A stretch of DNA of 64,000 nt from Octopus sinensis. Lineage: Eukaryota. Below are positions 3,600 to 54,544 of the stretch, one piece after another. The position numbers and the translations under genes were made by a program. The stretch lies in the NCBI RefSeq assembly GCF_006345805.1, contig NC_043023.1, forward strand, positions 5,890,001 to 5,954,000. The letters are read 5' to 3'. A model generated the notes under the pieces. The model saw only the letters and a list, made by a program, of their open reading frames with translations, did not search any database and was not told the DNA's origin. Position 1 is the stretch's first letter, and each line of letters begins with the position of its first letter.

Positions 3600-4309
3600 T
3601 ATCCAATATTTTTTGTGTTTTCATGCTCATTCCCTCGTGTTCGTACCTGTGGTTGAATACAAAGAACAAATTTTTGAGTGGATTGTAGGTATTTAACATC
3701 TACTTCTAGCATTGGCAATAGTCATTTCTAGTAGCCCCCTTAACTATAATTATATACATAAAAAAATTAATGTTGCCTATACAGTTATTTTTATGTGCAT
3801 GTTCTCAGCACAAGAAACTATTAGTAACACATAAAAACATATATTGTATCTATTAAATTATATATATATAGATTCTGGCACACATCTACATATGTATGTG
3901 TAAGTGTATATGTGCACACACGTCTCTTTCTCTCTCTTATGCACGCCTCTGTCTCTCTCTCATGCATGCCTCTGTCTCTCTCTCTCTCTCTCTCACACAC
4001 ACATGCCTCTGTCTCTCTCTCACACACACACATATACCAACACAATAGTAACACTTGTAGACAAATGCCATTACTGACACTAATATGTCACCATCTCTGC
4101 TATCATTGCTGGCACCACCACCACACTACACACACTCACAACCACCACCACACCACCTCTACAATCCTTATCTCTAAACCTGACTCGAACAACTGTTACT
4201 GATGGCCGGTGGGGGTTGGTCGTTTGCAGGGGACATCGATACGGAACATCAGTAACTGACAGACTTACAAAAGAGACAAGGTAAGGAACATACCCGACCT
4301 CTACTTTCT

Positions 4310-8958: not shown

Positions 8959-9566
8959 ACAGGATTTGCAAGATAATTCCATTTATTGCAAATAGAGTTA
9001 TGATTTTTTGTATGACTTTTGTCAATGTCATAATTTTTTCCTTTTGACATTTGATAGCCATTACTTTTAGCTTAGTTTAGAAGCAAATTGCACATAATTT
9101 TGTTTACAGCTGTTAGTTCAGTGTCAATTTAACATGGAGTGCAAAAACAAATATTTTCGCCATATTTTGCTTTTTCATTTCTGTAAAGGCAAGAAAGTTG
9201 CTGAGGCTCACAAAGGGATATGTGAAGTTTTGGGTGCTGATTGCTTAACAGAATGCACATGTCAGAAATGGTTTAAAAAATTCCATTCTGGAGATTTTTC
9301 ACTCAAAGATGACCAACATTCTGGTCTACCTACTGAAGTTGATGATGACCGAATCAAAGCCATAATTGAATCTGATTGTCATATAACCGTGCAAGAGATT
9401 GCCGAGGCCTTAAATGTGTCACACACAACAATTGAAAATCACTTAAAATGTCTTGGATTTATTAAGAAGCTTGATATTTTGGTTCCACATAAATTCAAAG
9501 AGATTCACTTAACACAACAAATCAATATTTGTGATATGCATCTCAAACGCAATGAAATCAACTGAA
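8959..9566 (+). mobile_element. Mariner transposon remnant (N-terminal HTH region of transposase, truncated)
   Basis: ORF 9134-9565: FRHILLFHF, QKWFKKFHSGDFSLKD, SGLPTEVDDD, KKLD.LVPH. No catalytic domain or right TIR seen. Confidence 0.9.
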
Positions 9567-11280: not shown

Positions 11281-14210
11281 ATAATAATAATAATAATAAT
11301 AATAATTGTGTACAGTGCTCAGGTGCACTACAACTCATCTAAAGTGTATATATAATCAGGTGTAGTTTCGGCGGATTTCGGAAAGCATGAGGGCCTTAAA
11401 AGATGCAGTGTCATGGCAGTCAACAACTGACGCAGGCAGTTTATTCCATGCTTCAGCAACTCTGAGCGTGAAAAAATGTTTCCGAAAGTCATGGGAGCTG
11501 TATTGTTTTCTGACTTTGTAGGCATGTCCACGTGTGTTAGACACATGGAGATCAAAAAGGTGTTCAGTGTTGTTGTTGGTGAGGTGGTTGATAACTTTGT
11601 GGGTGTTTACCAAGTCCGTCGCCAAACGCCGGAGCTTCAGTGAATCCATGCCCAGGGAAACAAGGCGCTCAGAATATGGTAGGTGTCTGATGGAGGGTAT
11701 GCGTTTGGTTGCACGTCTCTGGACAGATTCCAGGAGGTCAATGTTCTGTGCAAGATAGGGGTTCCAAACTGATGATGCGAATTCCAAGTGTGGTCGTACC
11801 ATAGCTGTATACAGTTTTAAATAGATGGCTGGAGAGCGGCTAACAAAAGACCTGCTGAGTGATGCCAAGACACCCTCGGCCTTCCTGACAATCTTAGAGA
11901 TATGCTTTGACCAACGCAAATCACTGCTGACAGTGATGCCTAGGTCACGCTCGCAAGAGGATTTCTTGATATCAGTGTTGTGGAGGGAGTATGTGAACGC
12001 AGGGTTTTTTCTCCCAAAATGCATGGTGGTACACTTGTCCACAGCCAGTTTCAGTTGCCAGTCTGTGATCCATTGCTGCATTGTGTCTAGGTCTGATTGC
12101 AGGAAAGAGTTGTAGACATCAGGATCTGTCCTCTTGATTTCAAGGTACAGCTTGATGTCGTCTGCATATTTCAATACTGTGGCATTCTTTAAATTGGCAT
12201 CTATGTCGTTAATGTATGCCACAAACAAGAGGGGACCAAGGACAGATCCCTGTGGTACACCCGATGACATCTCATATGGTGTAGAGTGCTGTCCTAGAAC
12301 TGTGACTACCTCCTTTCGGCTGAGGATGAAGGATTTCAACCAGTTAAAAAGGTCATCCCCCACACCCATTGCAGAGAGTTTCACCATAAGCCTTTTGTGT
12401 GGCACAGAGTTGAAAGCCTTAGCAAAGTCAAGGTAGACAACATCCACCCATGAGCCACTGTCAGTAATCTGAGTAATGTCCTCAAGGAACTCGACAAGCT
12501 GGTCACTGCAGCTGGAGTTAGGGACAAATCCATATTGTGAGGGTCGGATGAGACTGTGAGAGCTCCAGAAGTTCCAGAGTGTTTCTCTGACACACGATTC
12601 CATCAGTTTTGCAATACAGCTAGTGAGACTGACTGGGCGATAGTTGACAGGTGATGTGCGGTCGCCCTTTTTGAACAGAGGAATGACACTGGCAGTTTTC
12701 CACTGCTCCGGAGTAGCACCATTGTTGAGACAGTACTGGAAGAAAATAGAAAGCTGGTGTAAAAGGAAGTGCCTGCCACGTTTGAGAAGCAGGTATGTAA
12801 CTCCATCGAGACCAGGGGAGGCATAGTTGCGCTTATTTTGAAGGTGACGTCGCAGCATTGCAGGTGTAAATTCCATAGTTGTTATGGAGTTTGCTGTTAG
12901 TGATGGTGAAGATGGTACATTTTGACTTTCAACAGTGAATATGTTTGCATAGCACTCGGCAATGAGTTCTGCGCATTCCTTGGGGTCGTCAGTGATCTGG
13001 TTTGTGTGAGGGTTGCGAAGAGGGCCCACTGGAGAGTGAGGTCTCTGCTTTGAGTGCACATATTTCCAGAAAACCTTGCTGTCAGGATTGGCTGCTATGC
13101 ACTGTTCAAATTCAAGCACTGCTTTTTTTGTCACTTGCTTGAGATGGTTGGAGGATTTATTCCGCTTCTTCCTGTTGGTGTCTGATTTATGCAACTTGTA
13201 TTCCCGTTCAGCAGTCCGACGTTCCTTCCTGGCAAGTCGGACCGCTGAAGTTTCCCAAATTGCCCTTTTGGGGCGGTTCTTCTTTTTTTGTTTACGTGGC
13301 ACTGATGCTGCACATGCTGCCCATATTGAGTCCAGGATACTCTGGAGTATAGTATTCACATCTCCAGAGTTGTAGAATTCACGCCAGTTTGGGTGCTGTA
13401 GTTCAGTGTGGTACAGGTTCCAATCTGCTCTCTTCCAATCGAAGGAAGCAGATTGGAGATGGTTCAGGTTTTTGTTGCCCGCAAGAGCCAGATTGGCGAT
13501 GATCATAGCATGATCAGAGTCACCTAGAGGTTCCTCCGTAGTGCAATTGATAACCGCTTCAGGAGTTGTGGTGAAGAGCAGGTCCAAGGTGTTGTCGCCT
13601 CTTGTTGGAGAGGTGACTACTTGTGACCAGTTTGAGTCCAGCACAAGCTCAACAAAATCGTTTGCACTCTGTGGCCAATGGAAGGTCTCCCAATCGAACT
13701 CAGGATGATTGAAATCGCCTGCAATAAACACATAAGTGGCTGTTTTCCTGGCAGCAGCTTGGAGGACATTGCAAAGCTGTGTGTCCCGATGGTAACTTGG
13801 GGGACGATAAACAACGCCAAGCAGGAGTGTTGACATGGTCATACGCACGTCACAGAAAAAAAACTTCTTCTTGTGATTCGTTCAAATCGGCACAAGGAAT
13901 TACCAAAAAATTTGAACGAACGTAGACCATCACACCACCACCACGGGGGTTAGTGCGGTCCTTACGGAAGAGGTTGTACCCCGTAATGTTGAAAACCCCA
14001 TCACAGAGTAAGGAATGCGCCCATGTTTCCGTGACAGTGATGAAGTCAGGGTCAACACTTCTGACGTAGGCGTTGAACAAATGTATTTTGTTGCATAAAC
14101 TGCGAGCATTTAAGGACAACAATTTGTACCCTGCTCGCAGTTTATGATGGTGTGTAGAGGATGGCAGGTTGTTCTGGCTTAGTTTCCCTGAGTTGCTGTA
14201 GTCTTTTTAG
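11281..14210 (-). mobile_element. CR1/Jockey-group LINE, ORF2 (APE + RT) nearly intact, no ORF1 seen
   Basis: SLNARS, TETW, GDFN, YRPVSLTS, DFAKAF, GVPQGSVLGP, YADD motifs. One +1 frameshift in the A8 run at 13856-13863; (ATT)n 3' tail at ~11281-11306. Confidence 0.95.
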
Positions 14211-16913: not shown

Positions 16914-16986
<73 letters not shown>

Positions 16987-17051
16987 TATACAAACAAGTG
17001 AGTGGACAAATGAAAGAAGGTCACTCAACCAATTTATTGGGAGTTACACAT

Positions 17052-17213
17052 ATGAATCAAAACAGTTTAATTCAAATTTATTGGTAGTCTGGAGTTTCAA
17101 GCATGATGCTAGTCATCAGTCATTTTGAATTTGAATACAAAATGGCTGACAACTAGCATCATGCTTGAAACTCAAGAGTACCAATGAATTTGAATCAAAC
17201 TGTTTTGATTCAT
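17052..17213. repeat. Palindrome, ~75-bp arms, hammerhead-like remnants in both arms
   Basis: atgaatcaaaacag...gcatgatgctag versus ctagcatcatgc...ctgttttgattcat. Confidence 0.85.
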
Positions 17214-17332
17214 TATATATATATATATATATATAATATATATATGATAGTAGGGAATATAATTCAAAAAATTACAGGGAAAAATTCAATTTAACAATTT
17301 TAAATCAAATTTCACAATATATAATATATGTA

Positions 17333-18774: not shown

Positions 18775-19014
18775 CTGGATATTATGTGTTTGTTGATGAA
18801 AAATGTTTTAGCTGTGACCATTCCATGTTTTCCCATGTGATTGTTCTTCCTTTTCTTCTCTTTTTGAAGGAGATATTGCTATTATTTCAAGCATGTCAAG
18901 CAGCCACGTGGAAGTTGTCTTGTTAGATCATAGTCTTTCATTGACACTGCTGTTGTTGTTGTTGTTGTTATTGATGATGATAATGATGATGATGATGTTG
19001 TTTTTTTCTTTCAG

Positions 19015-19543
19015 TCATGATGACAGTAGCATCCACAAGAGCCGCAGCAACATGAGTGTGACAGACGGGGCACCAAGTCCCGGCAAGGATCAGTACCTTC
19101 CACCCAGGTACGAGGACCAACCCTACAGCCAAACCTACGACCCCAACTACGATGATTATCGTCACCCTAATTATGAGAACTACAGCTCTGACCCTGCAGA
19201 GAACATCAAAGGAGACCAATACTATGGTGACGGTGCCGAGGGTTACTACCCTGAGGGCACTGAAGGTTACTATGGGGACGGTTACAATGCTGAAGGTTAC
19301 AATGCTGAAGGTTACTATGATGATGGTTACTATGGTAACGATTACTATGGGGATGACTCCAATAACTATGGTACTTATGATGATGGTGCCTATGAGGATT
19401 ACCAGCGCAAACGGCAGAGTGGCCTCTCCAATACTGGGGCCAATGATGTCCCCCTTAAGTTTACAAGTTCTAGTATGAATGATGATAAGAAAGACGATGG
19501 CTCTGGAGGGACAGGACATAATGCAATGACCACTTTTGTTTAA
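19015..19543 (+). CDS. Terminal coding exon of a probable L1/neuroglian-like cytoplasmic tail: 175 aa, Tyr/Gly/Asp-rich, C-terminal TTFV
   Basis: ttttttctttcag acceptor, phase 2, stop-free to TAA with non-microsatellite codon usage. YGDG motif and S/T-x-V PDZ ligand resemble neuroglian/SAX-7 tails; no FIGQY. Confidence 0.8.
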
Positions 19544-19843: not shown

Positions 19844-19998
19844 GTACTTCAACGCAATCATCTGCACACATGCATATGACCCTGTGGTTAGGGTACTGCA
19901 CTCACAATTTAGCAATCATGATTTCAATTCCTAGACAAGGCGGTGCATTGCTTTTTGAGCAAAACACTTCATCTCTGATCTGTGTGCCTTGAGAGGAT

Positions 19999-20215
19999 GA
20001 GTGGGCAGCCCAACTTTCCCTTAACATCCCCTTGCTTTCATCTGATCTTTTCTAAATACCCTTCCCTTTGTAGGTGGGCAGCCCAAATTTCCTTTAACAT
20101 CCCCTTGCTTTCATCTGATCTTTTCTAAATACCCTTCCCTTGTGAGTGGGCAGCCCAAATTTCCCTTAACATCCCCTTGCTTTCATCTGATCTTTTCTAA
20201 ATATCCCTCCCTTTC
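19999..20215. repeat. Three tandem 72-73-bp units; diverged copy at ~19655-19760
   Basis: gtgggcagccc at 20001, 20074 and 20146. Confidence 0.85.
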
Positions 20216-33223: not shown

Positions 33224-34189
33224 CATTTCTTTACTACCCACAATGGGCTAAACACAGAGGAGACAAACAAGAACAGACACACGGATTAAGCCGATTACAT
33301 CGACCCCAGTGCGTAACTGGTACTTATTTAATTGACCCCGAAAGGATGAAAGGCAAAGTCAAACTCGGCGGAATTTGAACTCAGAACGTAACGGCAGACG
33401 AAATACCTATTTCTTTACTACCCACAAAGGGCTGAACACAGAGGAGACAAACAAGAACAGACACACGGATTAAGCCAATTACATCGATGCCAGTGCGTAA
33501 CTGGTACTTATTTAATCGACCCCGAAAAGATGAAAGGCAAAGTCAACCTCGGCGGAATTTGAACACAGAACGTAACGGCAGACAAAATACCTATTTCTTT
33601 ACTACCCACAAAGGGCTGAACACAGAGGAGACAAACAAGAACAGACACACGGATTAAGCCGATTACATCGACCCCAGTGCGTAACTGGTACTTATTTAAT
33701 CGACCCCGAAAAGATAAAAGGCAAAGTCGACCTGGGCGGAATTGGAACTCAGAACGTAACGGCAGACGAAATACCTATTTCTTTACTACCCACAAAGGGC
33801 TGAACACAGAGGAGACAAACAAGAACAGACACACGGATTAAGCCGATTACATCGATGCCAGTGCGTAACTGGTACTTATTTAATCGACCCCGAAAAGATG
33901 AAAGGCAAAGTCAACCTCGGCGGAATTTGAACACAGAACGTAATGGCAGACAAAATACCTATTTCTTTACTACCCACAAAGGGCTGAACACAGAGGAGAC
34001 AAACAAGAACAGACACACGGATTAAGCCGATTACATCGACCCCAGTGCGTAACTGGTACTTATTTAATTGACCCCGAAAAGATGAAAGGCAAAGTCGACC
34101 TCGGCGGAATTTGAACACAGAATGTAGCTGCAGACGAAATACCGCTAAGCATTTCGCCCGGTGTGCTAACGATTCTGCCAGCTCGCCGC
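33224..34189 (-). repeat. Tandem array of five 184-bp SINE bodies plus one tRNA-like head (SINE family 2)
   Basis: Units start 33224, 33408, 33592, 33776 and 33960; head ...gccagctcgccgcc at ~34144-34189. Confidence 0.92.
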
Positions 34190-35095
34190 CTTCAGAAAGA
34201 GTACAGCAAGGATCGCCACCACCCCCTGTCAGAACCTCGTGGAGCTTTAGGTGTTTTCGCTCAATAAACACTCACAACGCCCGGTCTGGGAATCGAAACC
34301 GCGATCCTACGACCGCGAGTCCGCTGCCCTAACCACTGGGCCATTGCGCCTCCTTTGATACTGTACCACAGTACCATTATCTATAACTTGGTCACTAAGG
34401 AAACAAGAAGTTGAAGAATGGTTGCTGAGAGCAGTGCAAGCTATGTACAGAGTCATCATTTTAACAACGACAATTTATTTTATTATATTTTTCATTATTT
34501 TAAAACTTAACTAAAACAAAAGCAGCATATTTCAACAGATATATGGTAACAAAAGGGTTAAAGTGATCTAAATTAAAACCTTCTGTCAAAATTTCATAGG
34601 CGCAGGAGTGGCTGTGTGGTAAGTAGATTGCTTACCAACCACATAGTTTTGGGTTCAGTCCCACTGCGTGGCACCTTGGGAAAGTGTCTTCTACTATAGC
34701 CTCAGGACGACCAAAGCCTTGTGAGTGGATTTGGTAGATGGAAACTGAAAGAAGCCTGTTGTATATATGTATTGAGACCGCCTTCGGTCATGAATGACCA
34801 TGGGATTGAACCTACAAAGTTACCCTCTCAGGCAGAAGTCCAGGCACGGTTGTTTGAGAAAGGCCAGTAGTCGCCCATGCATACCAGCCTCCCCTCTCCA
34901 TGCCACCAGTGTTATCCAAGGGAAGGGCAAAGGGGCCGATACAGCTTGGCACCTGTGACATCACAACTCATTTTAACAGCTGAGTGAACTGTGTCTTGCT
35001 CAAGAATACAACATGCAGCCCGGTCTGGGAATCGAACTAACCTCCTCACGATTGTAAGCTTGACACTCTAACCATTGAGCCATGTGCCTTCACAG

Positions 35096-41810: not shown

Positions 41811-41903
41811 ATGGCTCTCACAACAGTGCAGGGCCTTGTTAGCTAGTAACATCTAGAGCACAGAGAAGGGAAGGGAAAATAAAAGCATGAACAGATTACT
41901 CAC

Positions 41904-41993
41904 GTCGGACTATAAGGGTCCTCATTGCTGAGACCATACCATACTTGTTACTAGCATAACAATGATAGACGCCAGTATCTGTTAGTCCAAATT
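41904..41993 (-). CDS. Nrg: Neuroglian/L1CAM-like exon, Ig5 C-terminal part (..LTDTGVYHCYASNKYGMVSAMRTLIVR), apparently 1 nt short
   Basis: ttctttcacag acceptor, C|GTGAGT donor, DTGVYHC motif. It starts AAT TTG GA- CTA ACA GAT, so one added base restores NLxLTDTG in phase 0. Confidence 0.88.
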
Positions 41994-42286
41994 CTGTGAA
42001 AGAACAATACAAAAAAATTAGTAGAATACTAAGGGAGGTAACTGAGAATTTATTCTTTTTACTTGTTTCAGTCATTTGACTGTGGCCATACTGGAGCACC
42101 GCCTTTAGTCGAGCAAATTGACCCCAGGACTCATTCTTTGCAAGCCTAGTACTTATTCTATCGGTTTATTTTGCCGAACCGCTAAGTTACGGGGATGTAA
42201 ACACGCCAGCATTGGTTGTCAAGTGATGTTGGTGGGGGGGACAAACATAGACACACAAACACATACACACACAGATATACATACAT

Positions 42287-43795
42287 ATCATCATCATCAT
42301 CATCATCATCATCATCGTTTAACGTCCGTTTTCCGTGCTAGCACGGGTTGGACGGTTTTCGACCGGGGTCTGGGGAACAGGGGCTGCCCCAGGCTCCAGT
42401 CTGGTCTGGCAGTGTTCTACAGCTGGATGCCCTTCCTAACGCCAACGCACCCCTCGCGAGTGTAGTGGGTGCCTTTTACGTGCCACCTGCACAGTGCCAG
42501 AGGGGTCTGGCATCAGCCACGGTCGGTTGGTGCCTTTTATGTGCCACCTGCACAGAAGCCAGTCGGGGCGGTGCTGGCATCGGCCACGTTCGGATGGTGT
42601 TTTTAATGTGGGGTGGGTGCAGAAATATAGGGGAGCACCAGTAGGGAGGGGTGTTCAGAGTGTTCATGTACTTGACTCAACAGGTCTCCTCAAGCACAGC
42701 GGGACGATCTGGATCCAGGGTACTTTGAATGGGCAGGGGCTATGCGGAACTGATGCAGGAGCAGCCTGGGTCTTTGCAGTCACAGCATGTCTCCAGAGAT
42801 CTCGGTCCTTCGCCCATTGCTCGGTGAGGCCCAACGCTCTGAGGTCAAGCTGACTGCCTCATCCCATGTCTTCCTGGGTCTATACTTCTCCCCCTGATAC
42901 CTTCAACTGTTTTGGGAGTGGCACTTCTTCACACATCTCTCCTCATCCATCCGCAGCACATGACCATACATCGCAAGCGTCGCTCTTGCACACCACATCT
43001 GATGCTTCTTATATCCAGCATTTCTCTCAGGATGCTTACACTCTGTCTTCAGCGTGCACACTGACACTACACATCCAGCGGATCATGCTAGCTTCATTTC
43101 TTTCAAGTCTACGCATGTCCTCTGCAGTCATAGCCCATGTTGCATTACCGTGAAGCATGGCAGTTTCGCACACATGCATCATACAGTCTACCTTTCGCTC
43201 TGAGGGAGAGACCCTTTTTCGCCAGTAGGGTAGGAGCTTTCTGAACTTTGCCAGGCTATTCGTATTCTATTGTGATACTCCTCTGTGCATCCACCTCCGC
43301 TACTAACTTGTCACCCAGTAGCGGAAACTATCAACTACTTCTAGTTTCTCCCCCTGGAGTGTGATGGATCTGCCTTTCTGAGTGTCTTGGTGGTCTATTG
43401 TCCCTGTGCATCTGCCGCACATGAAAGCTATCTTATCTGTTAATTTCCCTTTAATGTTGCTGCACCTCTTATGCGTCCATAGCTTACATGGGTGCATCTT
43501 ATGGAGTTTCTACCTACACCTTTCCTACAGATCGAGCAGGGCCACCTGCCCAAGGGGTGTGTGCTGAGTTCGCCTTTCTGCTTACTATTACTTTGGTCTT
43601 TGCTACATTTACTCTAAGGCCCTTGATTCTAACCCTTGCTTCCACACCCGAAATTTCTTTTCTAGTTCCAGTAGTGATTCTGCTATGAGAGCCAGGTCCA
43701 TCAGCATAGAGGAGCTCCCAGGGGCAACCTGTTTTGAATTCCTCTGTTATTGCCTGGAGGACTATGATGATAGAAGGGGACTGAGGGCTGAGCAT
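42287..43795 (-). mobile_element. RTE-clade LINE 3' portion, same family as 58737-62008, many indels, nested in a SINE
   Basis: [24 protein letters not shown] and EKLEVVDSFRY peptides plus 3' UTR and (CAT)n tail. Confidence 0.9.
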
Positions 43796-43935
43796 ATATA
43801 TATATATATATATATAATATATATATATATATATACATATAAACGATGGGCTTCTTTCAGTTTCCATCTACCAAATCCCACTCACAAGGATTTATGTATA
43901 TATATATATATGTATATGTATATATTTTATATATG

Positions 43936-43998
<63 letters not shown>

Positions 43999-44889
43999 TA
44001 TACATATACATATATATGACAGGCTTCTTTCAGTTTCCGTCTACCAAATTCACTCACAAGGCTTTGGTTGACTCGAGGCTATAGCAGAAGACACTTGCCC
44101 AAGATGCCACGCGTTGGGACTGAACCTGGAACCATGTGTTGGTAAGCAAGCTATTTAACCCACAGACACTTTTAGGCCTATGATAGAACTTTTTAATCCT
44201 AAGTGTTTCCAAATAAAAATTTTTTAAACCCAAAACACTGCAATTTGTAAAATAAATGATTGGTTGTGTTAACTGGTATTTCGATATTTGTCAGAGTTAG
44301 AAACTCTTCCTCAGAAAATATTGGAGAAGCGTTATTCGCTGACTTCTCTTTCTATGGTAATATCACTATGAATTTTTGAAAATATGTAAATGTAATTTCT
44401 GTTGTACTTTTCTCTTGGAGAACACTGAAAAAAAACCAGCTAATACTTCCTTTGTGAATTTTGGGATGATGCGAAGAGCTGTTGAGGCAATTGTAATCGA
44501 AATCAAATTTGATGACTGGCATCCATGCTAGCAGGGTTCAAAGAGCCCATACGATCATGATCATTGACAGAGCGACTAACCGGCTTCCGTGGCCAGTGGC
44601 ACATAAAAGCACCATTCGAGTGTGATCATTACCAGTGTCAGACGATTTGACTGAGGACTGGCAAACCGGATGGCTGCAAACAGCTCCAATCTGATCTGGC
44701 AGAGATTCTACACTGGATGCCCTTCCTAATGCCAACCACTCCGAGAGTGTAGTGGGTGCTTTTATGTGCCACCAGCATGAGGGCCAGTCAAGCGCTACTG
44801 GCAACGGCCACACTCAAATGGTGTTTCTTACTGCCACCTGCAACAGCCAGTCCAGCGGCACTGGCAACAACCTCGCTCGAATGTTTTTT

Positions 44890-46150
44890 AGTCTCAGTCT
44901 GTGCAAGTACTCCACCTTAAATTTTTCTGTCTTCTTTCTCCATCAAATTTATCCCATTTTCAAAATCCCAAAGAACTTAACCATCTCTTCTATCTGCTGC
45001 TTCATAACCTCCCTGAAGGTATCGATAGCCCATCCAGACATTGATTTTGCCTCTCTTCAGACTAACAAACCACCACACTTTCTCAGTCCGAACTCCATTC
45101 TGGTATCACACTGAAGGTAAACACCGTATCAACGAGGGAACTGACTTGGGATTCATCTTTACCACAAAGTTTTGAGGTCATCCATGAATAACCAATGGTT
45201 TAACTTTTTGTTAGCAGTTTTTGAATACACACCCATCTTTTGCTTTCCTCAGAATCAGTGTAGTGGTATCAAGCACAGTACAAAGATCACTGGGGACAGA
45301 CAGTCCCTTGGAAGATGCCCCTCCTGATTTCTATTGCCCCTAAACTTCTTCCGTATGCTGTCAGATCCGTCCTTCAATTCGCCATACTTTTTCCAAGCAA
45401 TCGCTGAACATCGATGCAATACCAAATGGGTTCACACATTCCATAATCCAAGAATGTGGGATCATATCGTACGCTTTGCAATAGTTGATCCATGACATGG
45501 CTAAGTTACTTTTCCTCCTCTTGCAGTCTCCAAGTACAGTTTTGTCTATCAGTAGTTTTTCTGATGTATTTCAAGATTTCATTGACATTTTTTCGTTTCT
45601 TCGTTCAATTTCCATCAATCACCTTTTTAAGGTTGCAAATAATGTCGCTATTGTTCTCCTGTAGCCTTACCTTTGTTCTGTCGTAGATTGCCTTTTGTTC
45701 ACCTGTCATATCACCATTAGTTTTATCATCTTCTTTTAGATCGTCTGTATGTCTCTCATCAAGTAAACTACCACTGCTCCTTTCCTGTGCTATGCGATTA
45801 CTCTTATTAGTAAGAACTGTATTCTCATCGTTATCTCTGCTGCTATTTATCTCATCAAGTAAACTACCACTGCTCTTTCCTGTGCGATGCGATTATCTTA
45901 TTAGTAAGAACTGTATTCTCATCGTTATCCCTCTGCTGCTATTTACCATGACCTGTCTTTTGATAACTTCCAGCTCTACTTCTGTGAACCAACGATTTTT
46001 TTCTATCGCTCTAGCTTAATCACATAGTCTCTGTTCCGTGAGTTTGAAACAATCCCTTTTCTCTCCAGTGATTATACATACATTGTCGGTAACCCCTAAT
46101 TTGAGCACCATTTCATCTGCCAGGCTGCTCAGGTAGTACACTCCATGATC
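44890..46150 (-). mobile_element. Old R4/Dong-like RLE LINE fragment (RT region), heavily decayed
   Basis: Manual translation shows FMDDLK and MEFGLRKC remnants; internal ~85-nt tandem duplication at 45760-45935. Confidence 0.6.
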
Positions 46151-46639
46151 ACAGCATTAATTTGCTTGCTCCATCTATGCCATGTGTGGTGGTCCCTTTC
46201 TGGATATCAACAACTGGAGCCAGGCCAGAATCTCTGAGCCTGCCGGGTGGAACCTGTCATCATCATTGGCTTCAGTTTCATTACCACTGTTATTCACAAT
46301 TTTTGGGTTTTTCATTGTCACTCAATGAGGTAGCGATTATCAAGTTGTGCAATTACCAGTGTTTTTATTGTGACACCATCACTTGATATATCATTAATCA
46401 GTCTATGAGAAGGCTCCACTTGTTTCCTTTCATTATTATTATTTTATTATCATCACTGATATCACTGATATATTGTTATAAATTATTATTATTATTATTT
46501 TTGTTTTTTTCTTCTTTCAAATTTGCTTCCATTTCTTGCCGAGTGTCTTCCCGACTCCTAGGGCAAAGAACTCATAGTATACATTGGTAGGCCATTAACT
46601 AAACTCAATAGTTCGTTCATTTTTTTTTTTTATTAAATT

Positions 46640-46970
46640 AAAATACATGGGTAGTAATAGTTCTCACATCGCCATGCTCTTCTCAATTCGTGGTGATGTA
46701 CCAGTTAAGACAATCTTTTGCACTTCTTGCAGGGATGGTAAACCAGGGCATTCTCATATAATTTTCAGTTCCCTTCTTGATCATTCCTAGTGCTCCGAGA
46801 TTACTGGTATTGTAACCACCTTGGAGTCCACCTTGAGATGCACATTGGCAGTTTTGATAGTAATGCCGACTTATTAGCCAGTGTAGATATTGGCCACTCT
46901 GTTCATGGTGTCTTAATTTATACTCACTGGTGCTGAGACTTTACATCCAGAGATTAGGTGGTCCTTATTA
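46640..46970 (-). mobile_element. R4/Dong-like RLE C-terminal fragment
   Basis: LISGCKV.. and PGLPSLQEVQKIVLTGTS remnants; ATT-rich flanks. Confidence 0.6.
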
Positions 46971-47183
46971 TTATAATTATCATTATTATTATTATTTTAT
47001 CATCATTATTATTATTGGTTTGTTGTCGTCACTCTACGTTCTGAGTTCAAATTCCATCATCAAGGTTGACTTTGCCATTCATCCTTTTGGAAATCGATAA
47101 AATAAGTACCAGAGTTAAACGCTGGGGTCAATGTGACTCATTCCCTCTCTTGAAATTGCTTCTCTTGTGGCAAAATTTCAAAC

Positions 47184-47224
<41 letters not shown>

Positions 47225-47389
47225 TATAGGTGCAGGGAGTGGCTGTGTGGTAAGTCTTGCTAACCAACCACATGGTTCTGGGTTCTCAGTCCCACTGCAT
47301 GGCATCTTGGGCAAGTGTCTTTGCTATAGCCCTGGGCCGACTAATTCCTTGGAGTGGATTTGGTAGACGGAAACTGAAAGAAGCCTGTC

Positions 47390-47406
47390 GTATATATGTA
47401 TATATA

Positions 47407-47447
<41 letters not shown>

Positions 47448-48060
47448 TGTCTATATATTATTATGTATATTATATATATATATATATATATATATCGTAT
47501 ATTTATGTATATGTATATATATATATATGTATGTATATATATATATATATATATATGTATAGTATATATATGTATATATATATGTATATGTATATTATAT
47601 ATATATATGTATATATATATGTTATATTGTATATATATATATATATGTATTATATATATGTATATGTATATATTTATATATATATATGTATATATATATG
47701 TGTGTATATATATAGTATATATATATACTATATGTGTATATAATCTATATATTTAATATATATTTATTATAATAGTTATATATATATATGTATATCTTAT
47801 ATATATATATATATATCCTAATATATATAGTATATAATAGATATTATATATATATATATATAGTTTATCTAATAATATATATATATATAATATATCTATA
47901 TATATCTTATATATAATATATATGTGTGTGTATATATATATAGATATATATATATGTGTGTATATCTATATATATATAGTGTTTATATACTATATATATA
48001 TAGATATATGTGTGTATTATTCTTCCTATATATATATATATATAGTATATATCATATCTC
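47390..48060. repeat. ~670-bp compound (TA)n microsatellite inside a SINE family 1 copy
   Basis: Direct inspection. Confidence 0.95.
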
Positions 48061-48299
48061 ATATCATCATCTCATCATCATCATCATTGTTTAACGTCCG
48101 TTCTCCATTCTAGCATGGGTTGGACGGTTCGACCGGGGGTTCTGGGAAGCCAGAAGGCTGCACCAGGCTCCAGTCTAATCTGGCAAGTGTTTCTACAGCT
48201 TGATGCCCTCCTAACGCCAACCACTCCGTGAGTGTAGTGGGTGCTTTTTTTACGTTGCCACCTGCACAGGTGCCAGGCGAGGCTGGCAACGCCACGGTC

Positions 48300-48330
<31 letters not shown>

Positions 48331-48596
48331 GTGTATATGTTTGTGTGTGTCTGTGTTTGTCCCCACCAACATCGCTTGACAACCAATGCTGGTGTGTGTA
48401 GTCCCTGGTAACTTAGCGGTTCGGCAAAAGAGACCGATAGAATAAGTACTAGGCTTCAAAGAATAAGTCCCGGGTCGATTTGTCGACTAAAGCGGTGCTC
48501 CAGACATGGCCGCAGTCAAATGACTGAAACAAGTAAAAAGTAAAGAGTAAGGAGTAGAAGAGTATATTATTTATTATTATTATTACTACTACTAAC

Positions 48597-48783
48597 CTTG
48601 ATGTTTAGATTGCCATTCCTTAGTATGTGATACAACTGTCACCTGTCATCTGTTTGTTTGTCTCCTCTCATCCAAAGCACCTGCACCGAACATAGCCATG
48701 GTCTTGCACGTAATGTTTATGGTCTGACCCTCGGATCTCTCAGGGTCATGTTTCCCTTTTTCTAGCACCCGCCGGTGCCTCAG
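48597..48783 (-). CDS. Nrg: Neuroglian/L1CAM-like exon, Ig5 N-terminal part, frameshifted as given (AEAP / EGQTINITCK / WMRGDK / YHILRNGNLNIK in different frames)
   Basis: ttcttcttctgcag acceptor and AAG|GTTAGT donor. The expected Ig5 motifs appear in order but in shifting frames; 187 nt does not fit phase 1->0. Confidence 0.78.
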
Positions 48784-49009
48784 CTGCAGAAGAAGAATAT
48801 AGAGAAAAAAAAAATAATTCTTTCTAATTTTGATATAAGGCCAGAAACTTTGAGGGGAGATGGCAAGTGCTCTACTGTACTTATTCTCATGGACCCTGAA
48901 AGGGATGAACGGTAAAGACAAACTTGGGTGAATTTGAACTCAGCTGAAATCTGCTAAGCATTTGGTCTGGTGTGCTAACGATTCGGCCAGCTCACCACCT
49001 TTATAATAT

Positions 49010-49397
49010 ACTAGCAGTATCGCCCGGCGTTGCTCGGATTTGTTTTCAACAACCCTAGAATTGGAATTTTTGAAAAGTAAAATTGGCATTATGTAGCTTG
49101 TTATTCTCTTCAGTGAACATTTTTCTGGTTGAAATACACCGAAAAATGACGACACAGCAGTCAAAAATCGTTAAAAAATAGGATTTTCATAGAAAAAAAG
49201 CAGCTTTTTGATGTAAATAATTTTTGGTGTTAACATGGTCTGATTTGAATTTTTTCTTCTATGGAAGGAAGAGCAAGCCTTCTTCTATCATACTCTCAAT
49301 TTTTGTCAACTTGCGCTGCAGGGTCTCTCGGAGGAGATTGTGTTAGTTGAAGGCTACCAAACCTGCCACACACCACGACAACTTCAGTTTTATAATC
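49010..49397 (+). mobile_element. Helentron/Helitron-like element, same termini, different interior
   Basis: ACTAGCAGTATCGCCCGGCGTTGCTCGG start and caacttcagttttata end. Confidence 0.55.
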
Positions 49398-49659
49398 ATC
49401 ATCATCGTTTCGTTTAACGTCCGCTTTCCCTGCTATGCAGCATGGGTTGGACGATTTTGACTGAGGACTGGCGAATCAGATGGCTGCACCAGGCTCCAAT
49501 CTTGATTTGGCAGAGTTTCTACAGCTGGATGCCCTTCCAATGCCCACCCACTATCCGAGGTGTAGTGGGTGCTTTTTACATGCCACCCGGTACATGGGCC
49601 AGTCAGGCTGTACTGGCAACGACCCTCAACTCGAAATCTTTTTACATATAGAGATAATA

Positions 49660-50310
49660 ATTTCATTCATACATCGGTTGTTGTTGACGATGACGAGGAC
49701 ATCACATGGGAAAAGTAGATGGGTCACAGTGCATCGGCTGTGGCCAATCAGGCCAATGTGTGCTTTGGAAGTTCTGCTGCAGGTTGGGAACAGGTGAATT
49801 GCTGGGAATGAAGGTAAACAGTTGGCTCTGGACTTGTGCAGCTCATCTTTTCTTTGTGTTCCTGTGATTCTCTTCTGTTCATAGGAAGTGACACCACTGT
49901 TGGTACAGCTATGCCAGGTAGGGTGGTCCTGTGCTTGCATTTCCCAGGGTTGGTTTGAAAGCACTTCAGTGAGGCTTTGAGGGCCTCTTTGAAATGCTTT
50001 TTCTGCCCACTTTGTGTGCACTTGCCTTCTGCCGATTCATTGTAAAACAGTCTTTTGGGTAGCTATGTATCAGGCATTTGAACAAGGCAGCCTACCCACC
50101 CAACCTCCACTCTCCTCAGCAGTGTTTAAATGCTTGGTAGATCAGCTCAAGAGAGGACCTTTGTGTGCCCTCTGTATTAGGCCCTGTGTGGCCAATAAAA
50201 AACAATAAGAGAGGACCTCTGTGTCTGGTAACTTCTCTTGCTAAATGATCTTCAAAAGCTTTCTCAGACAATTCATGTGAAAGCAGTTTAGCTGCTTGGC
50301 ATGACATCCA
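49660..50310 (-). mobile_element. RTE (BovB-like) LINE 3' end, degenerate
   Basis: WEMQAQDHPTW...FPTCSRTSKAHIGLIGH resembles the RTE/BovB C-terminal zinc motif. Confidence 0.75.
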
Positions 50311-50576
50311 TAAACCATGCAAATCAGGCGTAGGAGTAGCTGTGTGGTAGGTAGCTTGCTTACCAACCACATAGTTCCAGGTTCAGTCCCACTGCGTGGC
50401 ACCTTGGGCAAGTGTCTTCTGCTATAGCCTCGGGCCAACCAAAGCCTTGTGAGTGGATTTGGTAGACGGAAACTGAAGAGAAGCGTATCATCATCATCAT
50501 CATTGTTTAACGTCCATTTTCCATGCTAACAGGGTTGGATGGTTCGACGGGGTCTGGGAAGCCAGGAGGCTGCGCC

Positions 50577-50619
<43 letters not shown>

Positions 50620-51037
50620 TGTGGTCTGTGTTTGTCCCCCCAACATTGTTTGACAACCGATGATGGTGTGTCTATGTCCCTGTTACTTAGCAGTTCAGCA
50701 AAAGAGACTGATAGAATAAGTACTAAGCTTACAAAGAATAAGTCCTGGGGTCGATTTGCTTGACTAAAGGCGGTGCTCCAGCATGGCCACAGTCAAATGA
50801 CTGAAGAAGTAACAGAGTAAAGAAAGTAAAGAGTATTACGTTTACATATAAATTTCAGGCTATTATACATTAGGGGACAAGGCACATTTCCCAAGGGCAG
50901 GAGTGGCTTAGTCAGACCCTGGTATATGAACTGGTACTTAATGCTGTTGAGTCTGAAAGGTGGAAAGGTGGCACTGACCTCACAAAAATGCAAGTGGACA
51001 CACAAACACACAAGCATGCAGACTTGCAGTAGTAGTA

Positions 51038-51068
<31 letters not shown>

Positions 51069-51190
51069 AGTAGTAGTAGTAAAGGTGCTGGTTGTGGTAG
51101 TAGCAGTAGTAGCATTTATTGTGTTTGGAGGAAGCATATAAAAAGGGAAATGAATGCCTGGTATCAGAATGTGCCAGGTTCAATACTCAC

Positions 51191-51334
51191 CAAAGACATA
51201 TAGAAAGGCATTAGCGAAGATATACCCATGGATATTACTGATATTACACTGGATGGTCATGGAATCTTGGTATGTGAGGTTGATGACAGTCAGGTTGGTT
51301 TCCTGTACTATAAACTTATTTTTATTGGGATATT
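51191..51334 (-). CDS. Nrg: Neuroglian/L1CAM-like exon, Ig4 C-terminal half (EYPNKNK...IQCNISNIHGYIFANAFLYVF)
   Basis: ttttatttttgcag acceptor, G|GTGAGT donor, 144 nt, phase 1->1. QCNxSNxxGYxxANAF is the characteristic L1/NrCAM/neurofascin Ig4 end. Confidence 0.93.
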
Positions 51335-51377
51335 CTGCAAAAATAAAATGTTTATAAACATTAATAATAATAATAAC

Positions 51378-51412
<35 letters not shown>

Positions 51413-51420
51413 TAATAATC

Positions 51421-53746: not shown

Positions 53747-53780
<34 letters not shown>
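51421..53780 (+). mobile_element. R4/Dong-like RLE non-LTR retrotransposon, 5'-truncated pseudogene copy in an (AAT)n tract
   Basis: YRPITCL, WIDYKKAFD, GIFQGDTLSP, YMDDLK, CCHC knuckle CRICGDGQETINHIISGC, RHD, RPD and IALLGT motifs. (AAT)n on both sides; a 14-nt duplication at ~51606-51633 and further frameshifts and stops. Confidence 0.93.
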
Positions 53781-54503
53781 TTAATGTCCCACTGCATGGC
53801 ACCTTGGGCAAATGTCTTCTACTATAGCCTCGGGCTGACCAAAGCCTTGTGAGTGGATTTGGTAGACAGAAACTGAAAGAAGCCCATCATATATATATAT
53901 ATTGTAGTTTTATTTGTATCGTTTTTACATCCTGTTTGTGTTACATTTTTTCTTGCTTGTTTTTACCCCTCTGCGAGGTAATTTTATTTTAATTCTCTCG
54001 CAGGAAGGATTAGTTTGGCGAGTCGTGTCCTGTCTTGCCTTCGAAACACGCTGGAGTCGAACTAGTGACAGCTGATGATAGGGGATTTTTCCTTGTGTAG
54101 TATGTCCTGTACTCTGTTTTTCTGTTGTAAAAAAATGGTTTTTCCGTTTTCATTTCTCATTGAGTTCTACGTCTAGTTGTGGTGTCCTGTACTCACGTAT
54201 ATATATTTATATATGCATGTATATATACATGTAGATGTAGGTACGTACATATATGTTTGTATGTATGCATATATTTTATTTATTACACTATATATATATA
54301 TATATATACATATGTACATGTGTGTATATGTTTGTGTGTCTGTATTTGTCCCCCCAACATCACTTGACAACTTAGTGGTTCAGCAAAAAGAGACCGATAG
54401 AATAAGTACTAGGCTTACAAAGAATAAGTTCTGGGGTCGGTTTTGTTGACTAAAGGCGGTGGCCCAACATGGCCACAGTCAAATGGCTGAAGCCAGTAAA
54501 AGA

Positions 54504-54544
<41 letters not shown>

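What the first reader, a model, noticed from the sequence alone, without database searches (positions are those of the whole stretch)
19015..19543. L1/neuroglian-type tail that has replaced the ankyrin-binding FIGQY with a tyrosine-rich 5-aa repeat
Seen: 175 aa with about 26 Tyr, 15-nt repeats (GYNAE GYNAE GYYDD GYYGN DYYGD), two YGDG motifs, C-terminal TTFV, and a phase-2 acceptor starting T|CAT GAT GAC. Established: L1-family last exons begin after a phase-2 intron, contain EYGD then FIGQY (ankyrin binding), and invertebrate members end in a class I PDZ ligand (ATYV, STFV). Inference: a divergent paralog or isoform uncoupled from ankyrin, with a Tyr/Gly low-complexity domain that could be a phosphotyrosine array or a condensate-forming module.
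Basis: partly seen in the sequence, partly recalled or inferred. Interest (0 to 1): 0.7.

Follow-up and report, generated by a model that had tools for sequence, protein, structure and literature searches.

The report
Octopus neuroglian tail lacking ankyrin motif
This is the already-annotated last coding exon of the Octopus sinensis "neuroglian" gene, an L1-type adhesion molecule from an old mollusc-wide paralog lineage whose disordered, tyrosine- and acid-rich tail has lost the ankyrin-binding FIGQY motif but keeps a PPxY motif and a C-terminal PDZ ligand.

Summary
Window 19015-19543 (+) is a 175-codon terminal exon behind a phase-2 acceptor. It has 26 Tyr, a 15-nt tandem repeat and ends in TTFV-stop.

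The window is Octopus sinensis CM016885.1. The peptide is 100% identical to RefSeq neuroglian isoforms X1, X3, X4 and X5, so the exon is already annotated.

"L1-type tail without FIGQY" holds:
- The full protein has an L1-type Ig/FN3/TM layout and groups with L1 proteins in a tree.
- The phase-2 split-Ser intron before the last exon is shared with the canonical Lottia L1 gene, whose last exon carries EYGD...FIGEY...ATLV.
- No Bravo_FIGEY domain or FIGQY was found in the protein, the gene's 3' part or the window.

"The repeat replaced FIGQY" does not hold. The FIGQY-equivalent site lies 3' of the repeat (PLKF|TSSSMNDD), and the whole cytoplasmic domain is divergent. The loss is ancient: Patella, Gigantopelta, Sinanodonta, Physella and decapodiform cephalopods form one non-canonical clade (98% bootstrap), beside a canonical FIGQY-bearing mollusc paralog.

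Conserved in the clade are a PPxY motif, Tyr/acid richness and a class-I PDZ ligand. dN/dS against O. bimaculoides is 0.29. The function, a disordered docking tail for PDZ, WW and possibly SH2 partners instead of ankyrin, is inferred. Interest is moderate.

The parts
19015..19543 (+). Terminal coding exon of Octopus sinensis neuroglian. It consists of 1 base completing a split codon, 175 codons and a TAA stop at 19541-19543.
   Evidence: It is 100% identical to the C-terminus of RefSeq isoforms X1, X3, X4 and X5. The annotated CDS ends at window 19543. dN/dS is 0.29 against O. bimaculoides.
18999..19014 (+). Pyrimidine tract and AG acceptor of the last intron (phase 2).
   Evidence: The same phase-2 split-Ser boundary is seen in Lottia canonical L1 and Patella non-canonical L1.
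4230..4280 (+). Optional 51-nt cassette exon (G)GHRYGTSVTDRLTKET(S), phase 2 on both sides. It is the penultimate coding exon.
   Evidence: tblastn hit, splice sites cag|G...AG|gtaagg. It is present or absent among O. bimaculoides and O. sinensis isoforms.
19100..19111 (+). PPRY, a PPxY (WW-domain ligand type) motif.
   Evidence: Coordinates. The motif is conserved as LPPSY (decapodiform), PPPSY (Patella) and QPPEY (Sinanodonta), and is absent in Gigantopelta and Physella. Binding is inferred.
19094..19402 (+). Tyr/Asp/Gly-rich low-complexity segment (residues 27-129 of the exon, holding all 26 Tyr).
   Evidence: Predicted unstructured, pLDDT about 40. Tyr/acid richness is shared by decapodiform, Patella, Gigantopelta and Sinanodonta tails.
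19261..19350 (+). 15-nt (5-aa) tandem repeat core, with units GYYGD, GYNAE, GYYDD and similar.
   Evidence: TRF. O. bimaculoides has a different unit set and is 10 aa shorter here.
19282..19311 (+). 30 nt (two repeat units, YNAEGYNAEG) missing from RefSeq isoform X2. The segment can be drawn as GT...AG.
   Evidence: Reading this as a repeat-length allele rather than a real micro-intron is inference.
19388..19462 (+). AYEDYQRK...VPLKF, the probable remnant of the canonical EYGD...P.KFNEDG block that precedes FIGQY.
   Evidence: Compare Sinanodonta PYEDYQREPTKFDDEG, Gigantopelta AYEEYNR...EPDKFDRDG, Patella PYDYQR...EPSKFDNYG, and canonical Ruditapes/Lottia EYGDVDP[SA]KFNEDGSFIG[QE]Y. Directly against canonical tails the octopus match is not significant on its own (p = 0.22-0.87 for the three canonical tails).
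19463..19498 (+). TSSSMNDDKKDD, the position where FIGQY would be. No ankyrin motif is present here.
19523..19540 (+). AMTTFV, the C-terminal class-I PDZ ligand (T at -2, V at 0).
   Evidence: Compare canonical Ruditapes AMSTFV, Lottia MATLV and Chelonus FATLV, and non-canonical DTCV, SSFV, DTFV and STFV. This was the only hhalign match between the tail profiles, and it is weak.

Best explanation
SHOWN. Window 19015-19543 (+) is the last coding exon of the Octopus sinensis gene that RefSeq calls neuroglian. The window is CM016885.1:5,890,001-5,954,000. The protein is a type-I membrane L1-family-type adhesion molecule: signal peptide, Ig domains, FN3 domains, one TM helix and a cytoplasmic tail of about 250 aa. 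This exon encodes the C-terminal 175 residues of that tail. The cytoplasmic part keeps the exon layout of a canonical mollusc L1 gene: a TM exon ending in phase 1, a mid exon of about 22 aa running from phase 1 to phase 2, and a last exon after a phase-2 split-Ser codon. Octopus adds two symmetric cassette exons. The gene belongs to a paralog lineage shared by cephalopods, gastropods and bivalves. In this lineage the cytoplasmic domain no longer matches the L1 Bravo_FIGEY domain and lacks FIGQY. In the bivalve member an 8-residue gap falls exactly over SFIGQYGS. A second mollusc lineage (Lottia, Ruditapes) keeps the canonical tail. Across the non-canonical lineage the retained features are a PPxY motif near the start of the last exon, a Tyr- and Asp/Glu-rich linker, a YE[DE]YQR...P.KF block and a C-terminal [ST]-x-V. 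In octopuses the linker has grown into GYY(G/D)D-type 5-aa units that change in number between species. The exon is under purifying selection.

INFERRED. The tail is an intrinsically disordered docking region. It does not couple the adhesion molecule to ankyrin/spectrin. Instead it presents short linear motifs: the C-terminal TTFV to PDZ scaffolds (as Nrg180 TYV binds Polychaetoid), PPRY to WW-domain proteins such as Nedd4-type ligases that would control surface turnover, and a dense array of acid-flanked tyrosines that could be phosphorylated to recruit SH2/PTB proteins or to switch the other contacts.
For: Identity: window 1-29543 is 100% identical to the O. sinensis locus L002, and the tail is 100% identical to XP_036370302.1 and other isoforms.

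Ortholog: O. bimaculoides neuroglian was found by an exhaustive HMMER search at E = 5e-72.

Architecture: Pfam finds Ig and fn3 domains. The best PDB matches are contactin-2, neurofascin and Drosophila neuroglian FN3 1-2, the last at 136 bits over 200 aa.

Tree: the non-canonical mollusc clade has 98% bootstrap and the canonical Lottia+Ruditapes pair 100%. Identity is 28-35% to L1 proteins against 21-24% to contactin, sidekick and Dscam. Patella (non-canonical) and Lottia (canonical), both limpets, are only 38% identical, so they are paralogs.

No L1 tail domain: Pfam finds nothing at E <= 10 for the exon or for the whole cytoplasmic domain, while a human L1 tail control hits PF13882 at 8e-32. 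A profile of four canonical tails finds nothing in six-frame fragments of the gene's 3' 43 kb or of the window.

Exon and phase conservation.

Tail homology: [DE]P.KF[DN]..G occurs in only 5 of 128 fetched proteins, all of them mollusc L1s, 26-53 aa from the C-terminus. The Ruditapes-Sinanodonta tail alignment has shuffle p of about 5e-4.

Motif conservation.

Selection: dN/dS is 0.29 overall, 0.16 in the N-terminal part and 0.23 in the Tyr-rich part, and all indels are in frame.

Disorder: AlphaFold mean pLDDT is 43, with no fold in the exon.

Transcription of the same architecture in decapodiforms: a 1303-aa product lies on 4.1-4.6 kb Logan contigs, and one cluster member is seen on 110 contigs, so these are spliced mRNAs joining an L1 ectodomain to a Tyr-rich ...DTCV tail.

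Precedents: C. elegans LAD-2 is an L1CAM with a divergent tail lacking the ankyrin motif (PMC2213605). Nrg180 TYV binds the PDZ protein Pyd (PMC4384726).
Against: No binding, phosphorylation or localisation data exist for this protein, so every functional step is inferred from motif type.

Direct sequence similarity between the octopus tail and canonical tails is not significant (shuffle p = 0.22; hhalign aligns only the last 7 residues at 1.5% probability). Homology of the exon therefore rests on exon position and phase, whole-protein orthology and intermediates in other molluscs.

PPxY is missing in Gigantopelta and Physella.

The C-terminal third of the exon evolves fast (dN/dS 0.68).

The AlphaFold alignment was shallow (6 sequences), so low pLDDT is weak evidence of disorder.

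The ectodomain exons lie outside the window. Their link to this exon comes from RefSeq/Gnomon models, whose RNA support I could not inspect.
Confidence: 0.8

Rival explanations
1. In an octopus L1 gene, the FIGQY segment of the last exon was overwritten by an expanding Tyr-rich 5-aa repeat, and the YGDG motifs are the old EYGD.
For: FIGQY is absent and the repeat lies in the same exon. The canonical last exon does hold EYGD then FIGQY.
Against: The repeat (residues 67-113 of the exon) lies upstream of AYEDYQRK...PLKF. That block aligns, through Sinanodonta, Gigantopelta and Patella, with EYGD...P.KFNEDG, so the FIGQY slot is at residues 150 onward. Relatives without GYYGD repeats also lack FIGQY, so the loss predates the repeat.
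Confidence: 0.07
2. This is one of two alternative last exons, as in Drosophila Nrg167/Nrg180. Another isoform of the same gene carries FIGQY and binds ankyrin.
For: Drosophila has isoform-specific FIGQY-bearing last exons (PMC4384726). The octopus gene is alternatively spliced in its cytoplasmic part.
Against: All 5 O. sinensis, 6 O. bimaculoides and 1 O. vulgaris models end with this exon. A regex and a canonical-tail HMM find no FIGQY-type coding fragment from the TM exon to 10 kb past the stop, or anywhere in the window on either strand. The only FIGSY is in a palindromic repeat whose frame is broken in O. bimaculoides.
Confidence: 0.03
3. The Tyr/Gly/Asp segment is the functional core. 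It would be a multivalent phosphotyrosine array or a sticker-spacer module that drives clustering or condensation of the adhesion molecule under the membrane.
For: There are 26 Tyr in 105 residues, each flanked by acidic or Gly residues. Tyr richness is conserved across more than one mollusc class while the sequence is not. dN/dS is 0.23 in this part, and it is predicted to be disordered.
Against: The segment is strongly acidic (24% D/E, 4 basic residues), unlike uncharged FUS-type Tyr/Gly/Ser domains, so homotypic condensation is not expected without a basic partner or cations. Unit number and type vary freely between close species. There are no data on phosphorylation.
Confidence: 0.2
4. The repeat region is a tolerated, functionally neutral spacer produced by replication slippage. 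Only the flanking motifs matter.
For: There are in-frame indels of whole units between O. sinensis and O. bimaculoides, and in isoform X2. The region is low-complexity.
Against: dN/dS of 0.23 in the aligned part and retention of Tyr at about 25% in every lineage argue for compositional constraint.
Confidence: 0.15
5. The tail still binds ankyrin through a degenerate motif, for example one of the G-Y-Y or D-Y-Q-R tyrosines.
For: Ankyrin binding in L1 proteins centres on a tyrosine that is regulated by phosphorylation (PMC4384726). Tyrosines are abundant here.
Against: There is no F-I-G context anywhere. The Bravo_FIGEY profile gives no signal at E <= 10. In the bivalve relative the segment is cleanly deleted.
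Confidence: 0.05

Closest known systems
Canonical protostome L1CAMs: Drosophila Neuroglian (Nrg180/Nrg167) and mollusc 'neuroglian' with PF13882 (Lottia LOTGIDRAFT_174928, Ruditapes XP neuroglian-like X2)
   Same: Ig + FN3 + TM ectodomain. A three-exon cytoplasmic layout with a phase-2 split-Ser intron before the last exon. A C-terminal class-I PDZ ligand (AMTTFV against AMSTFV, ATLV and TYV). Alternative splicing within the cytoplasmic part.
   Different: No KRxRGxKY juxtamembrane box, no Bravo_FIGEY domain and no FIGQY. The tail is about 250 aa instead of about 100, with 29-30 Tyr instead of 3-5. It has a PPxY motif and a Tyr/Asp/Gly repeat.
C. elegans LAD-2, the 'non-canonical L1CAM' (PMC2213605)
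   Same: An L1-type ectodomain combined with a cytoplasmic tail that is completely divergent and lacks the ankyrin-binding motif. It coexists with a canonical paralog in the phylum.
   Different: The LAD-2 tail is only 40 aa with no known motifs. The octopus tail is long and Tyr-rich and keeps a PDZ ligand. Orthology between the two was not tested, and independent origin is likely.
Non-canonical mollusc 'neuroglian' proteins (Patella vulgata X1, Gigantopelta aegis, Sinanodonta woodiana, Physella acuta, Acanthosepion pharaonis 'NRCAM')
   Same: They form the same clade (98% bootstrap). They share the absence of PF13882, Tyr/acid-rich tails, YE[DE]YQR...P.KF, PPxY in most, and [ST]-x-V ends. Patella has the same phase-2 last exon.
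   Different: Their low-complexity units differ (RRDSY-type in Patella, RYSD-type in Sinanodonta, YDDQYY-type in cuttlefish). The GYYGD/GYNAE 15-nt array is octopus-specific.
Leech tractin (L1 family member with an inserted Pro/Gly-rich repeat); recalled from memory, not tested here
   Same: A lophotrochozoan L1-type protein that has acquired a lineage-specific low-complexity repeat and carries a PDZ-type C-terminus.
   Different: Tractin's repeat is extracellular and collagen-like, and tractin keeps the ankyrin motif.

Membership tests
L1CAM / neuroglian family | Ectodomain of 6 Ig followed by 3-5 FN3 domains, one TM helix, type-I topology | tested here: met
   Pfam finds Ig and fn3 domains in the O. 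bimaculoides ortholog. PDB matches span Ig1 through FN3 of contactin-2, neurofascin and neuroglian. A TM helix is found in all orthologs. These exons lie upstream of the window, and the link to the exon comes from RefSeq models.
L1CAM / neuroglian family | Ectodomain groups with L1 proteins rather than contactin, sidekick or Dscam | tested here: met
   NJ tree and identity matrix: 28-35% identity to L1 proteins against 21-24% to the others. This was NJ on 14 sequences only. Deep nodes are weakly supported.
L1CAM / neuroglian family | Conserved cytoplasmic domain of about 100 aa (Pfam PF13882 Bravo_FIGEY) | tested here: not met
   No hit at E <= 10 for the exon or the full cytoplasmic domain. 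The positive control (human L1 tail) scores 8.4e-32. The precomputed Pfam lists of the clade lack PF13882, while Lottia, Ruditapes and Chelonus have it.
L1CAM / neuroglian family | Ankyrin-binding FIGQY/FIGAY/FIGEY motif | tested here: not met
   Absent from all clade members, from the window on both strands and from the gene's 3' 43 kb.
L1CAM / neuroglian family | Juxtamembrane K/R-x-x-G-G-K-Y (FERM/ezrin-binding) box | tested here: not met
   Octopus has REKISERRRESYKKNMG where canonical proteins have KRNRG[DG]KY. Only a basic cluster plus one Tyr remains. This exon lies outside the window.
L1CAM / neuroglian family | Gene structure: last exon entered through a phase-2 intron, preceded by a short phase 1-to-2 exon and a TM exon ending in phase 1 | tested here: met
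   Octopus, Lottia canonical and Patella non-canonical. The vertebrate and Drosophila genes were not examined.
L1CAM / neuroglian family | Physical binding to ankyrin and homophilic adhesion | not testable with these tools
   Needs pull-down or cell-recruitment assays.
Non-canonical L1CAM (LAD-2 type) | L1-type ectodomain with a divergent tail lacking the ankyrin motif, alongside a canonical paralog | tested here: met
   with the definition from PMC2213605. A canonical paralog was shown for molluscs (Lottia, Ruditapes) but not for cephalopods themselves.
Contactin | 6 Ig + 4 FN3 with a GPI anchor, no TM helix and no cytoplasmic tail | tested here: not met
   A TM helix and a 250-aa tail are present. 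Identity to Mya contactin is 22%.
FUS-type prion-like low-complexity domain | Uncharged polar [G/S]Y[G/S]-rich composition | tested here: not met
   The segment is 25% Tyr but also 24% Asp/Glu with almost no Ser/Gln spacers. This was a composition test only.

The most novel reading that the evidence does not exclude
Molluscs carry a second, previously undescribed L1CAM lineage that traded ankyrin coupling for a Tyr-rich, PPxY- and PDZ-ligand-bearing disordered tail. Cephalopods may have kept only this lineage: no cephalopod protein with PF13882 appeared among the 120 best relatives, although Lottia and Ruditapes canonical proteins did. If so, L1-type adhesion in the octopus nervous system would signal through phosphotyrosine, WW and PDZ partners rather than the ankyrin-spectrin skeleton. 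The octopus-specific GYYGD array would then act as a tunable, length-polymorphic multivalent module.
Probability: 0.15. Interest if true: 0.6.

Novelty: new variant of a known kind. Interest (0 to 1): 0.35.

Why it matters
L1-family molecules are textbook examples of adhesion receptors tied to the ankyrin-spectrin skeleton through FIGQY. Only one well-studied exception is known, C. elegans LAD-2. This exon shows that a whole mollusc paralog lineage, including the gene that octopus annotations call neuroglian, has dropped that link while keeping the exon framework, the PDZ ligand and a PPxY motif.

For people using "neuroglian" as a marker in cephalopod neurobiology, it is a warning that the name does not imply ankyrin coupling. 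For L1 evolution, it gives a natural experiment on what the tail can become. The exon itself is already in RefSeq, so the gain is interpretive, not a new gene.

Tried and rejected
1. The word-index protein search with the tail found nothing. The exhaustive HMMER search was needed.

2. I tried linking the tail to the Ig exons seen in the same window. They are on the opposite strand, only 46-68% identical to the ortholog's Ig domains, and belong to a duplicated Ig-only module.

3. I looked for FN3 or TM exons in the window with tblastn, motif scans and reading of six-frame fragments. There are none. The rest of the gene lies upstream of the window.

4. 'SSDFRDDIGYVNDG' (O. bimaculoides) as a degenerate FIGQY: rejected, because it lies in the mid exon, whose canonical counterpart is VQEKE...FNELNK, not the FIGQY exon.

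5. FIGSY at 17033-17047 as a hidden alternative exon: rejected. It sits in a palindromic repeat between microsatellites, and a 2-bp deletion breaks the frame in O. bimaculoides.

6. Profile-profile comparison of non-canonical and canonical tails aligned only the last 7 residues, at 1.5% probability. The MAFFT alignment of these low-complexity tails is unreliable.

7. Pairwise shuffle tests of the octopus tail against other clade tails were mostly weak (p = 0.003-0.9).

8. Look-ups of O. sinensis isoform X2 and hemicentin-like X2 found no record. The longest isoforms had to be used.

9. P0003 and P0004 are low-complexity chance matches.

10. Literature searches found no paper on mollusc L1 tails.
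Full report
**What is in the sequence.** Positions 19010-19015 read ttcag|T after a long pyrimidine tract, followed by CAT GAT GAC. Translating 19016-19543 gives 175 residues and TAA. The composition is 26 Tyr, 25 Asp and 23 Gly. All tyrosines fall in residues 27-129, a stretch that is 25% Tyr and 24% Asp/Glu with four basic residues. Tandem Repeats Finder reports a period-15 array at 19261-19350 with 6 copies.

**Whose exon it is.** A word-index search with the peptide returned nothing, and Pfam gives no family. An exhaustive HMMER search of 1.84 billion representatives found one real relative, P0002, at E = 5e-72, matching residues 1203-1368 of a 1368-aa protein. That protein is Octopus bimaculoides XP_014776254.1 'neuroglian-like', clustered with five other 'neuroglian' isoforms. 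A search with the longest isoform found O. sinensis neuroglian. Its isoforms X1, X3, X4 and X5 contain the window's 175 residues exactly. The O. sinensis locus L002 is 100% identical to window 1-29543, which places the window at CM016885.1:5,890,001-5,954,000. The annotated CDS ends at window 19543. The exon is therefore already annotated in RefSeq.

**Gene structure.**
- In O. sinensis the TM exon ends ...KKNMG in phase 1.
- An optional 26-aa cassette follows, with phase 1 on both sides.
- A 22-aa mid exon (GSKTYIENAPEFRDDKGYVNDG) runs from phase 1 to phase 2.
- An optional 17-aa cassette follows, with phase 2 on both sides. It lies in the window at 4230-4280 with cag|G...AG|gtaagg.
- The last exon begins after a 14.7-kb intron.
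- That intron holds a LINE (RVT_1 and endonuclease, 11359-14206, minus strand) and a mariner HTH fragment.
- The split codon is AG|T (Ser) with the cassette and GG|T (Gly) without it, which matches the isoforms.

**Is it an L1-type gene?**
- Pfam finds Ig and fn3 domains in the ortholog.
- The best solved-structure matches are contactin-2, neurofascin, contactin-1 and Drosophila neuroglian FN3 1-2. The neuroglian match scores 136 bits over 200 residues, against about 99 bits for contactin-3 FN3 domains.
- In an NJ tree, the octopus protein, a decapodiform transcript product, and the Patella, Gigantopelta, Physella and Sinanodonta proteins form a clade with 98% bootstrap. Lottia and Ruditapes proteins form another with 100%.
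- All of these are 28-35% identical to insect and vertebrate L1 proteins, against 21-24% to contactin, sidekick and Dscam.
- Patella and Lottia are both limpets, yet their proteins are 38% identical. The two mollusc groups are therefore paralogs.

**The cytoplasmic domain.**
- The Lottia, Ruditapes and insect proteins carry PF13882 (Bravo_FIGEY). The octopus clade does not.
- I tested this directly. The octopus cytoplasmic domain, with and without cassettes, gives no Pfam hit at E <= 10.
- Canonical tails are about 100 aa with 3-5 Tyr, KRxRGxKY, EYGD...P.KFNEDGSFIG[QE]Y and an ATLV or STFV end. Tails in the octopus clade are 136-257 aa with 13-30 Tyr, no FIGQY, and mostly [ST]-x-V ends: TTFV, DTCV, SSFV, DTFV and STFV.
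- No alternative FIGQY exon exists. A regex and an HMM built from four canonical tails find nothing in six-frame fragments from the TM exon to 10 kb past the stop, or anywhere in the window.
- The single FIGSY at 17033 lies in a palindromic repeat, and its frame is broken in O. bimaculoides.

**Is the exon homologous to the canonical last exon?**
- In Lottia the canonical gene has the same layout. The TM exon ends KRNRGDKYH in phase 1, a 23-aa mid exon runs from phase 1 to phase 2, and the last exon starts AG|T GAT (Ser-Asp) and encodes ...EYGDVDPAKFNEDGSFIGEY...ATLV.
- Patella's non-canonical gene also enters its last exon through AG|C (Ser) in phase 2.
- The motif [DE]P.KF[DN]..G occurs in 5 of the 128 proteins fetched. 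All five are mollusc L1s of both lineages, and the motif lies 26-53 residues from the C-terminus.
- The Ruditapes canonical tail aligns with the Sinanodonta non-canonical tail (SETDS...EY...P.KF..[ED]G...STFV) with shuffle p of about 5e-4 and an 8-residue gap exactly over SFIGQYGS.
- Octopus keeps AYEDYQRK (compare PYEDYQRE in Sinanodonta), VPLKF and AMTTFV (compare AMSTFV in canonical Ruditapes).
- Taken alone, however, the octopus tail is not significantly similar to canonical tails (p = 0.22). hhalign aligns only the last seven residues at 1.5% probability.
- I conclude that the exon is the positional homolog of the canonical last exon. The FIGQY slot corresponds to TSSSMNDD... after PLKF (19463 onward). 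The Tyr-rich repeat is an expansion of the linker upstream, not a replacement of FIGQY.

**Constraint and variation.**
- Against O. bimaculoides, dS is 0.27 and dN is 0.078, giving dN/dS of 0.29. By part, dN/dS is 0.16 in the N-terminal part, 0.23 in the Tyr-rich part and 0.68 in the C-terminal part. All indels are in frame, including a 10-aa difference inside the repeat.
- O. sinensis isoform X2 lacks YNAEGYNAEG, which is 30 nt that can be drawn as GT...AG at 19282-19311. That is too short for an ordinary intron, so I read it as a repeat-length allele in the RNA source. This is an inference.
- O. vulgaris differs by one residue in the exon.
- Decapodiform products of 1302-1303 aa lie on 4.1-4.6 kb Logan contigs, and one cluster member is seen on 110 contigs. 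These must be spliced mRNAs, and they join an L1 ectodomain to a YDDQYY-type tail ending DTCV.
- PPxY is conserved near the start of the exon: LPPRY in octopus at 19100-19111, LPPSY in the decapodiform, PPPSY in Patella and QPPEY in Sinanodonta. It is missing in Gigantopelta and Physella.
- AlphaFold on the cytoplasmic domain gives mean pLDDT of 43, with no fold in the exon (shallow alignment).

**Mechanism.**
- *Shown:* an L1-type receptor with no recognisable ankyrin-binding domain, and with a conserved PPxY, a Tyr/acid-rich disordered linker and a class-I PDZ ligand.
- *Inferred:* the tail docks PDZ scaffolds at its C-terminus, as Nrg180 TYV binds Polychaetoid (PMC4384726). It docks WW-domain proteins at PPRY. 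It also offers many acid-flanked tyrosines to kinases. It does not bind ankyrin.
- The nearest functional precedent is C. elegans LAD-2, an L1CAM with an unrelated 40-aa tail lacking the ankyrin motif (PMC2213605).
- The condensate idea is weakened by the strong negative charge of the segment, but it is not excluded.

**Expression hints from papers.** A 'neuroglian isoform' was detected in the O. vulgaris skin-mucus proteome (PMC11431876). 'Neuroglian-like' genes were reported as expressed in glutamatergic-like neurons of Amphioctopus (PMC9795677). Neither paper identifies this gene specifically.

**Verdict.** The 'replacement' story, the YGDG = EYGD equation and the 'isoform' alternative are not supported, and the change is an ancient paralog feature rather than an octopus novelty. 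The exon is already annotated. What is new is the reading of the clade as a non-canonical L1 lineage. Novelty: new variant of a known kind. Interest: 0.35.

Noticed in passing
window 39313-63013, minus strand (exons about 63013-62903, 58338-58123, 56966-56826, 51335-51186, 48735-48597, 41985-41899, 39684-39373): This is a convergently oriented copy of the neuroglian Ig2-Ig6 module with no FN3 exons after it. It is 46-68% identical to neuroglian and 89-96% identical to the last module of O. sinensis 'hemicentin-2-like' XP_029652303.1, but it is not identical to that protein. It therefore looks like a further duplicate in an array of Ig-only derivatives, which also includes 'neurofascin-like' XP_036370269.1 on the same chromosome. 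This is reminiscent of insect hemolin.
   Followed up: partly
window 48597-48735, minus strand: The Ig5 first-half exon of that copy needs two frameshifts and contains an in-frame TGA relative to its relatives, while the other six exons are open. Either the copy is a young pseudogene or the reference assembly has local indel errors.
   Followed up: partly
L001 (O. bimaculoides CM046629.1) 77952-78051 and 78196-84601, against window 41881-58501: The Ig-module region is inverted in the O. bimaculoides assembly relative to O. sinensis. The breakpoint coincides with a 100-N scaffold gap, and that orientation would separate the Ig2 half-exons. This is probably a scaffolding artefact in the gap-rich O. 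bimaculoides assembly.
   Followed up: partly
O. bimaculoides neuroglian models P0002, P0005-P0009, residues about 508-585; L001 gap 33655-35063: All O. bimaculoides neuroglian models lack Ig6. In its place they contain SINE-derived or intron-derived sequence (SNLNLAEFLQLDALPNANHSESVVGAF...; HICFFKDMTSQIW...), next to assembly gaps. These look like model artefacts rather than real exonised SINEs.
   Followed up: partly
window 11359-14206 (-), 9098-9562 (+), 51555-52397 (+), 58641-61410 (+): Transposable elements. A LINE with endonuclease and RVT_1 domains, an 841-aa open frame, lies antisense in the last neuroglian intron. There is a Mos1/mariner HTH fragment. Two further RVT_1 frames lie inside introns of the Ig-module copy. 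Many SINE copies translate as ...[22 protein letters not shown]....
   Followed up: partly
window 16985-17244: A palindromic, MITE-like element of about 260 bp between TA/CA microsatellites is conserved at 89% with O. bimaculoides. It happens to encode FIGSY in one frame.
   Followed up: yes
window 19998-20200: A 73-bp tandem repeat (2.8 copies, 93% matches) lies about 450 bp downstream of the stop codon, in the presumed 3' UTR or flank. The region is partly alignable with O. bimaculoides.
   Followed up: no
L002 76620-76697 (O. sinensis; about 9.7 kb upstream of the window start): The optional 26-aa cytoplasmic cassette DDEVEIFTARQINSFYNFVDRLPKLY contains YNFV, a YxxPhi-type sorting motif. 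This recalls the vertebrate L1 RSLE mini-exon that creates YRSL. The parallel is from memory and was not tested.
   Followed up: no
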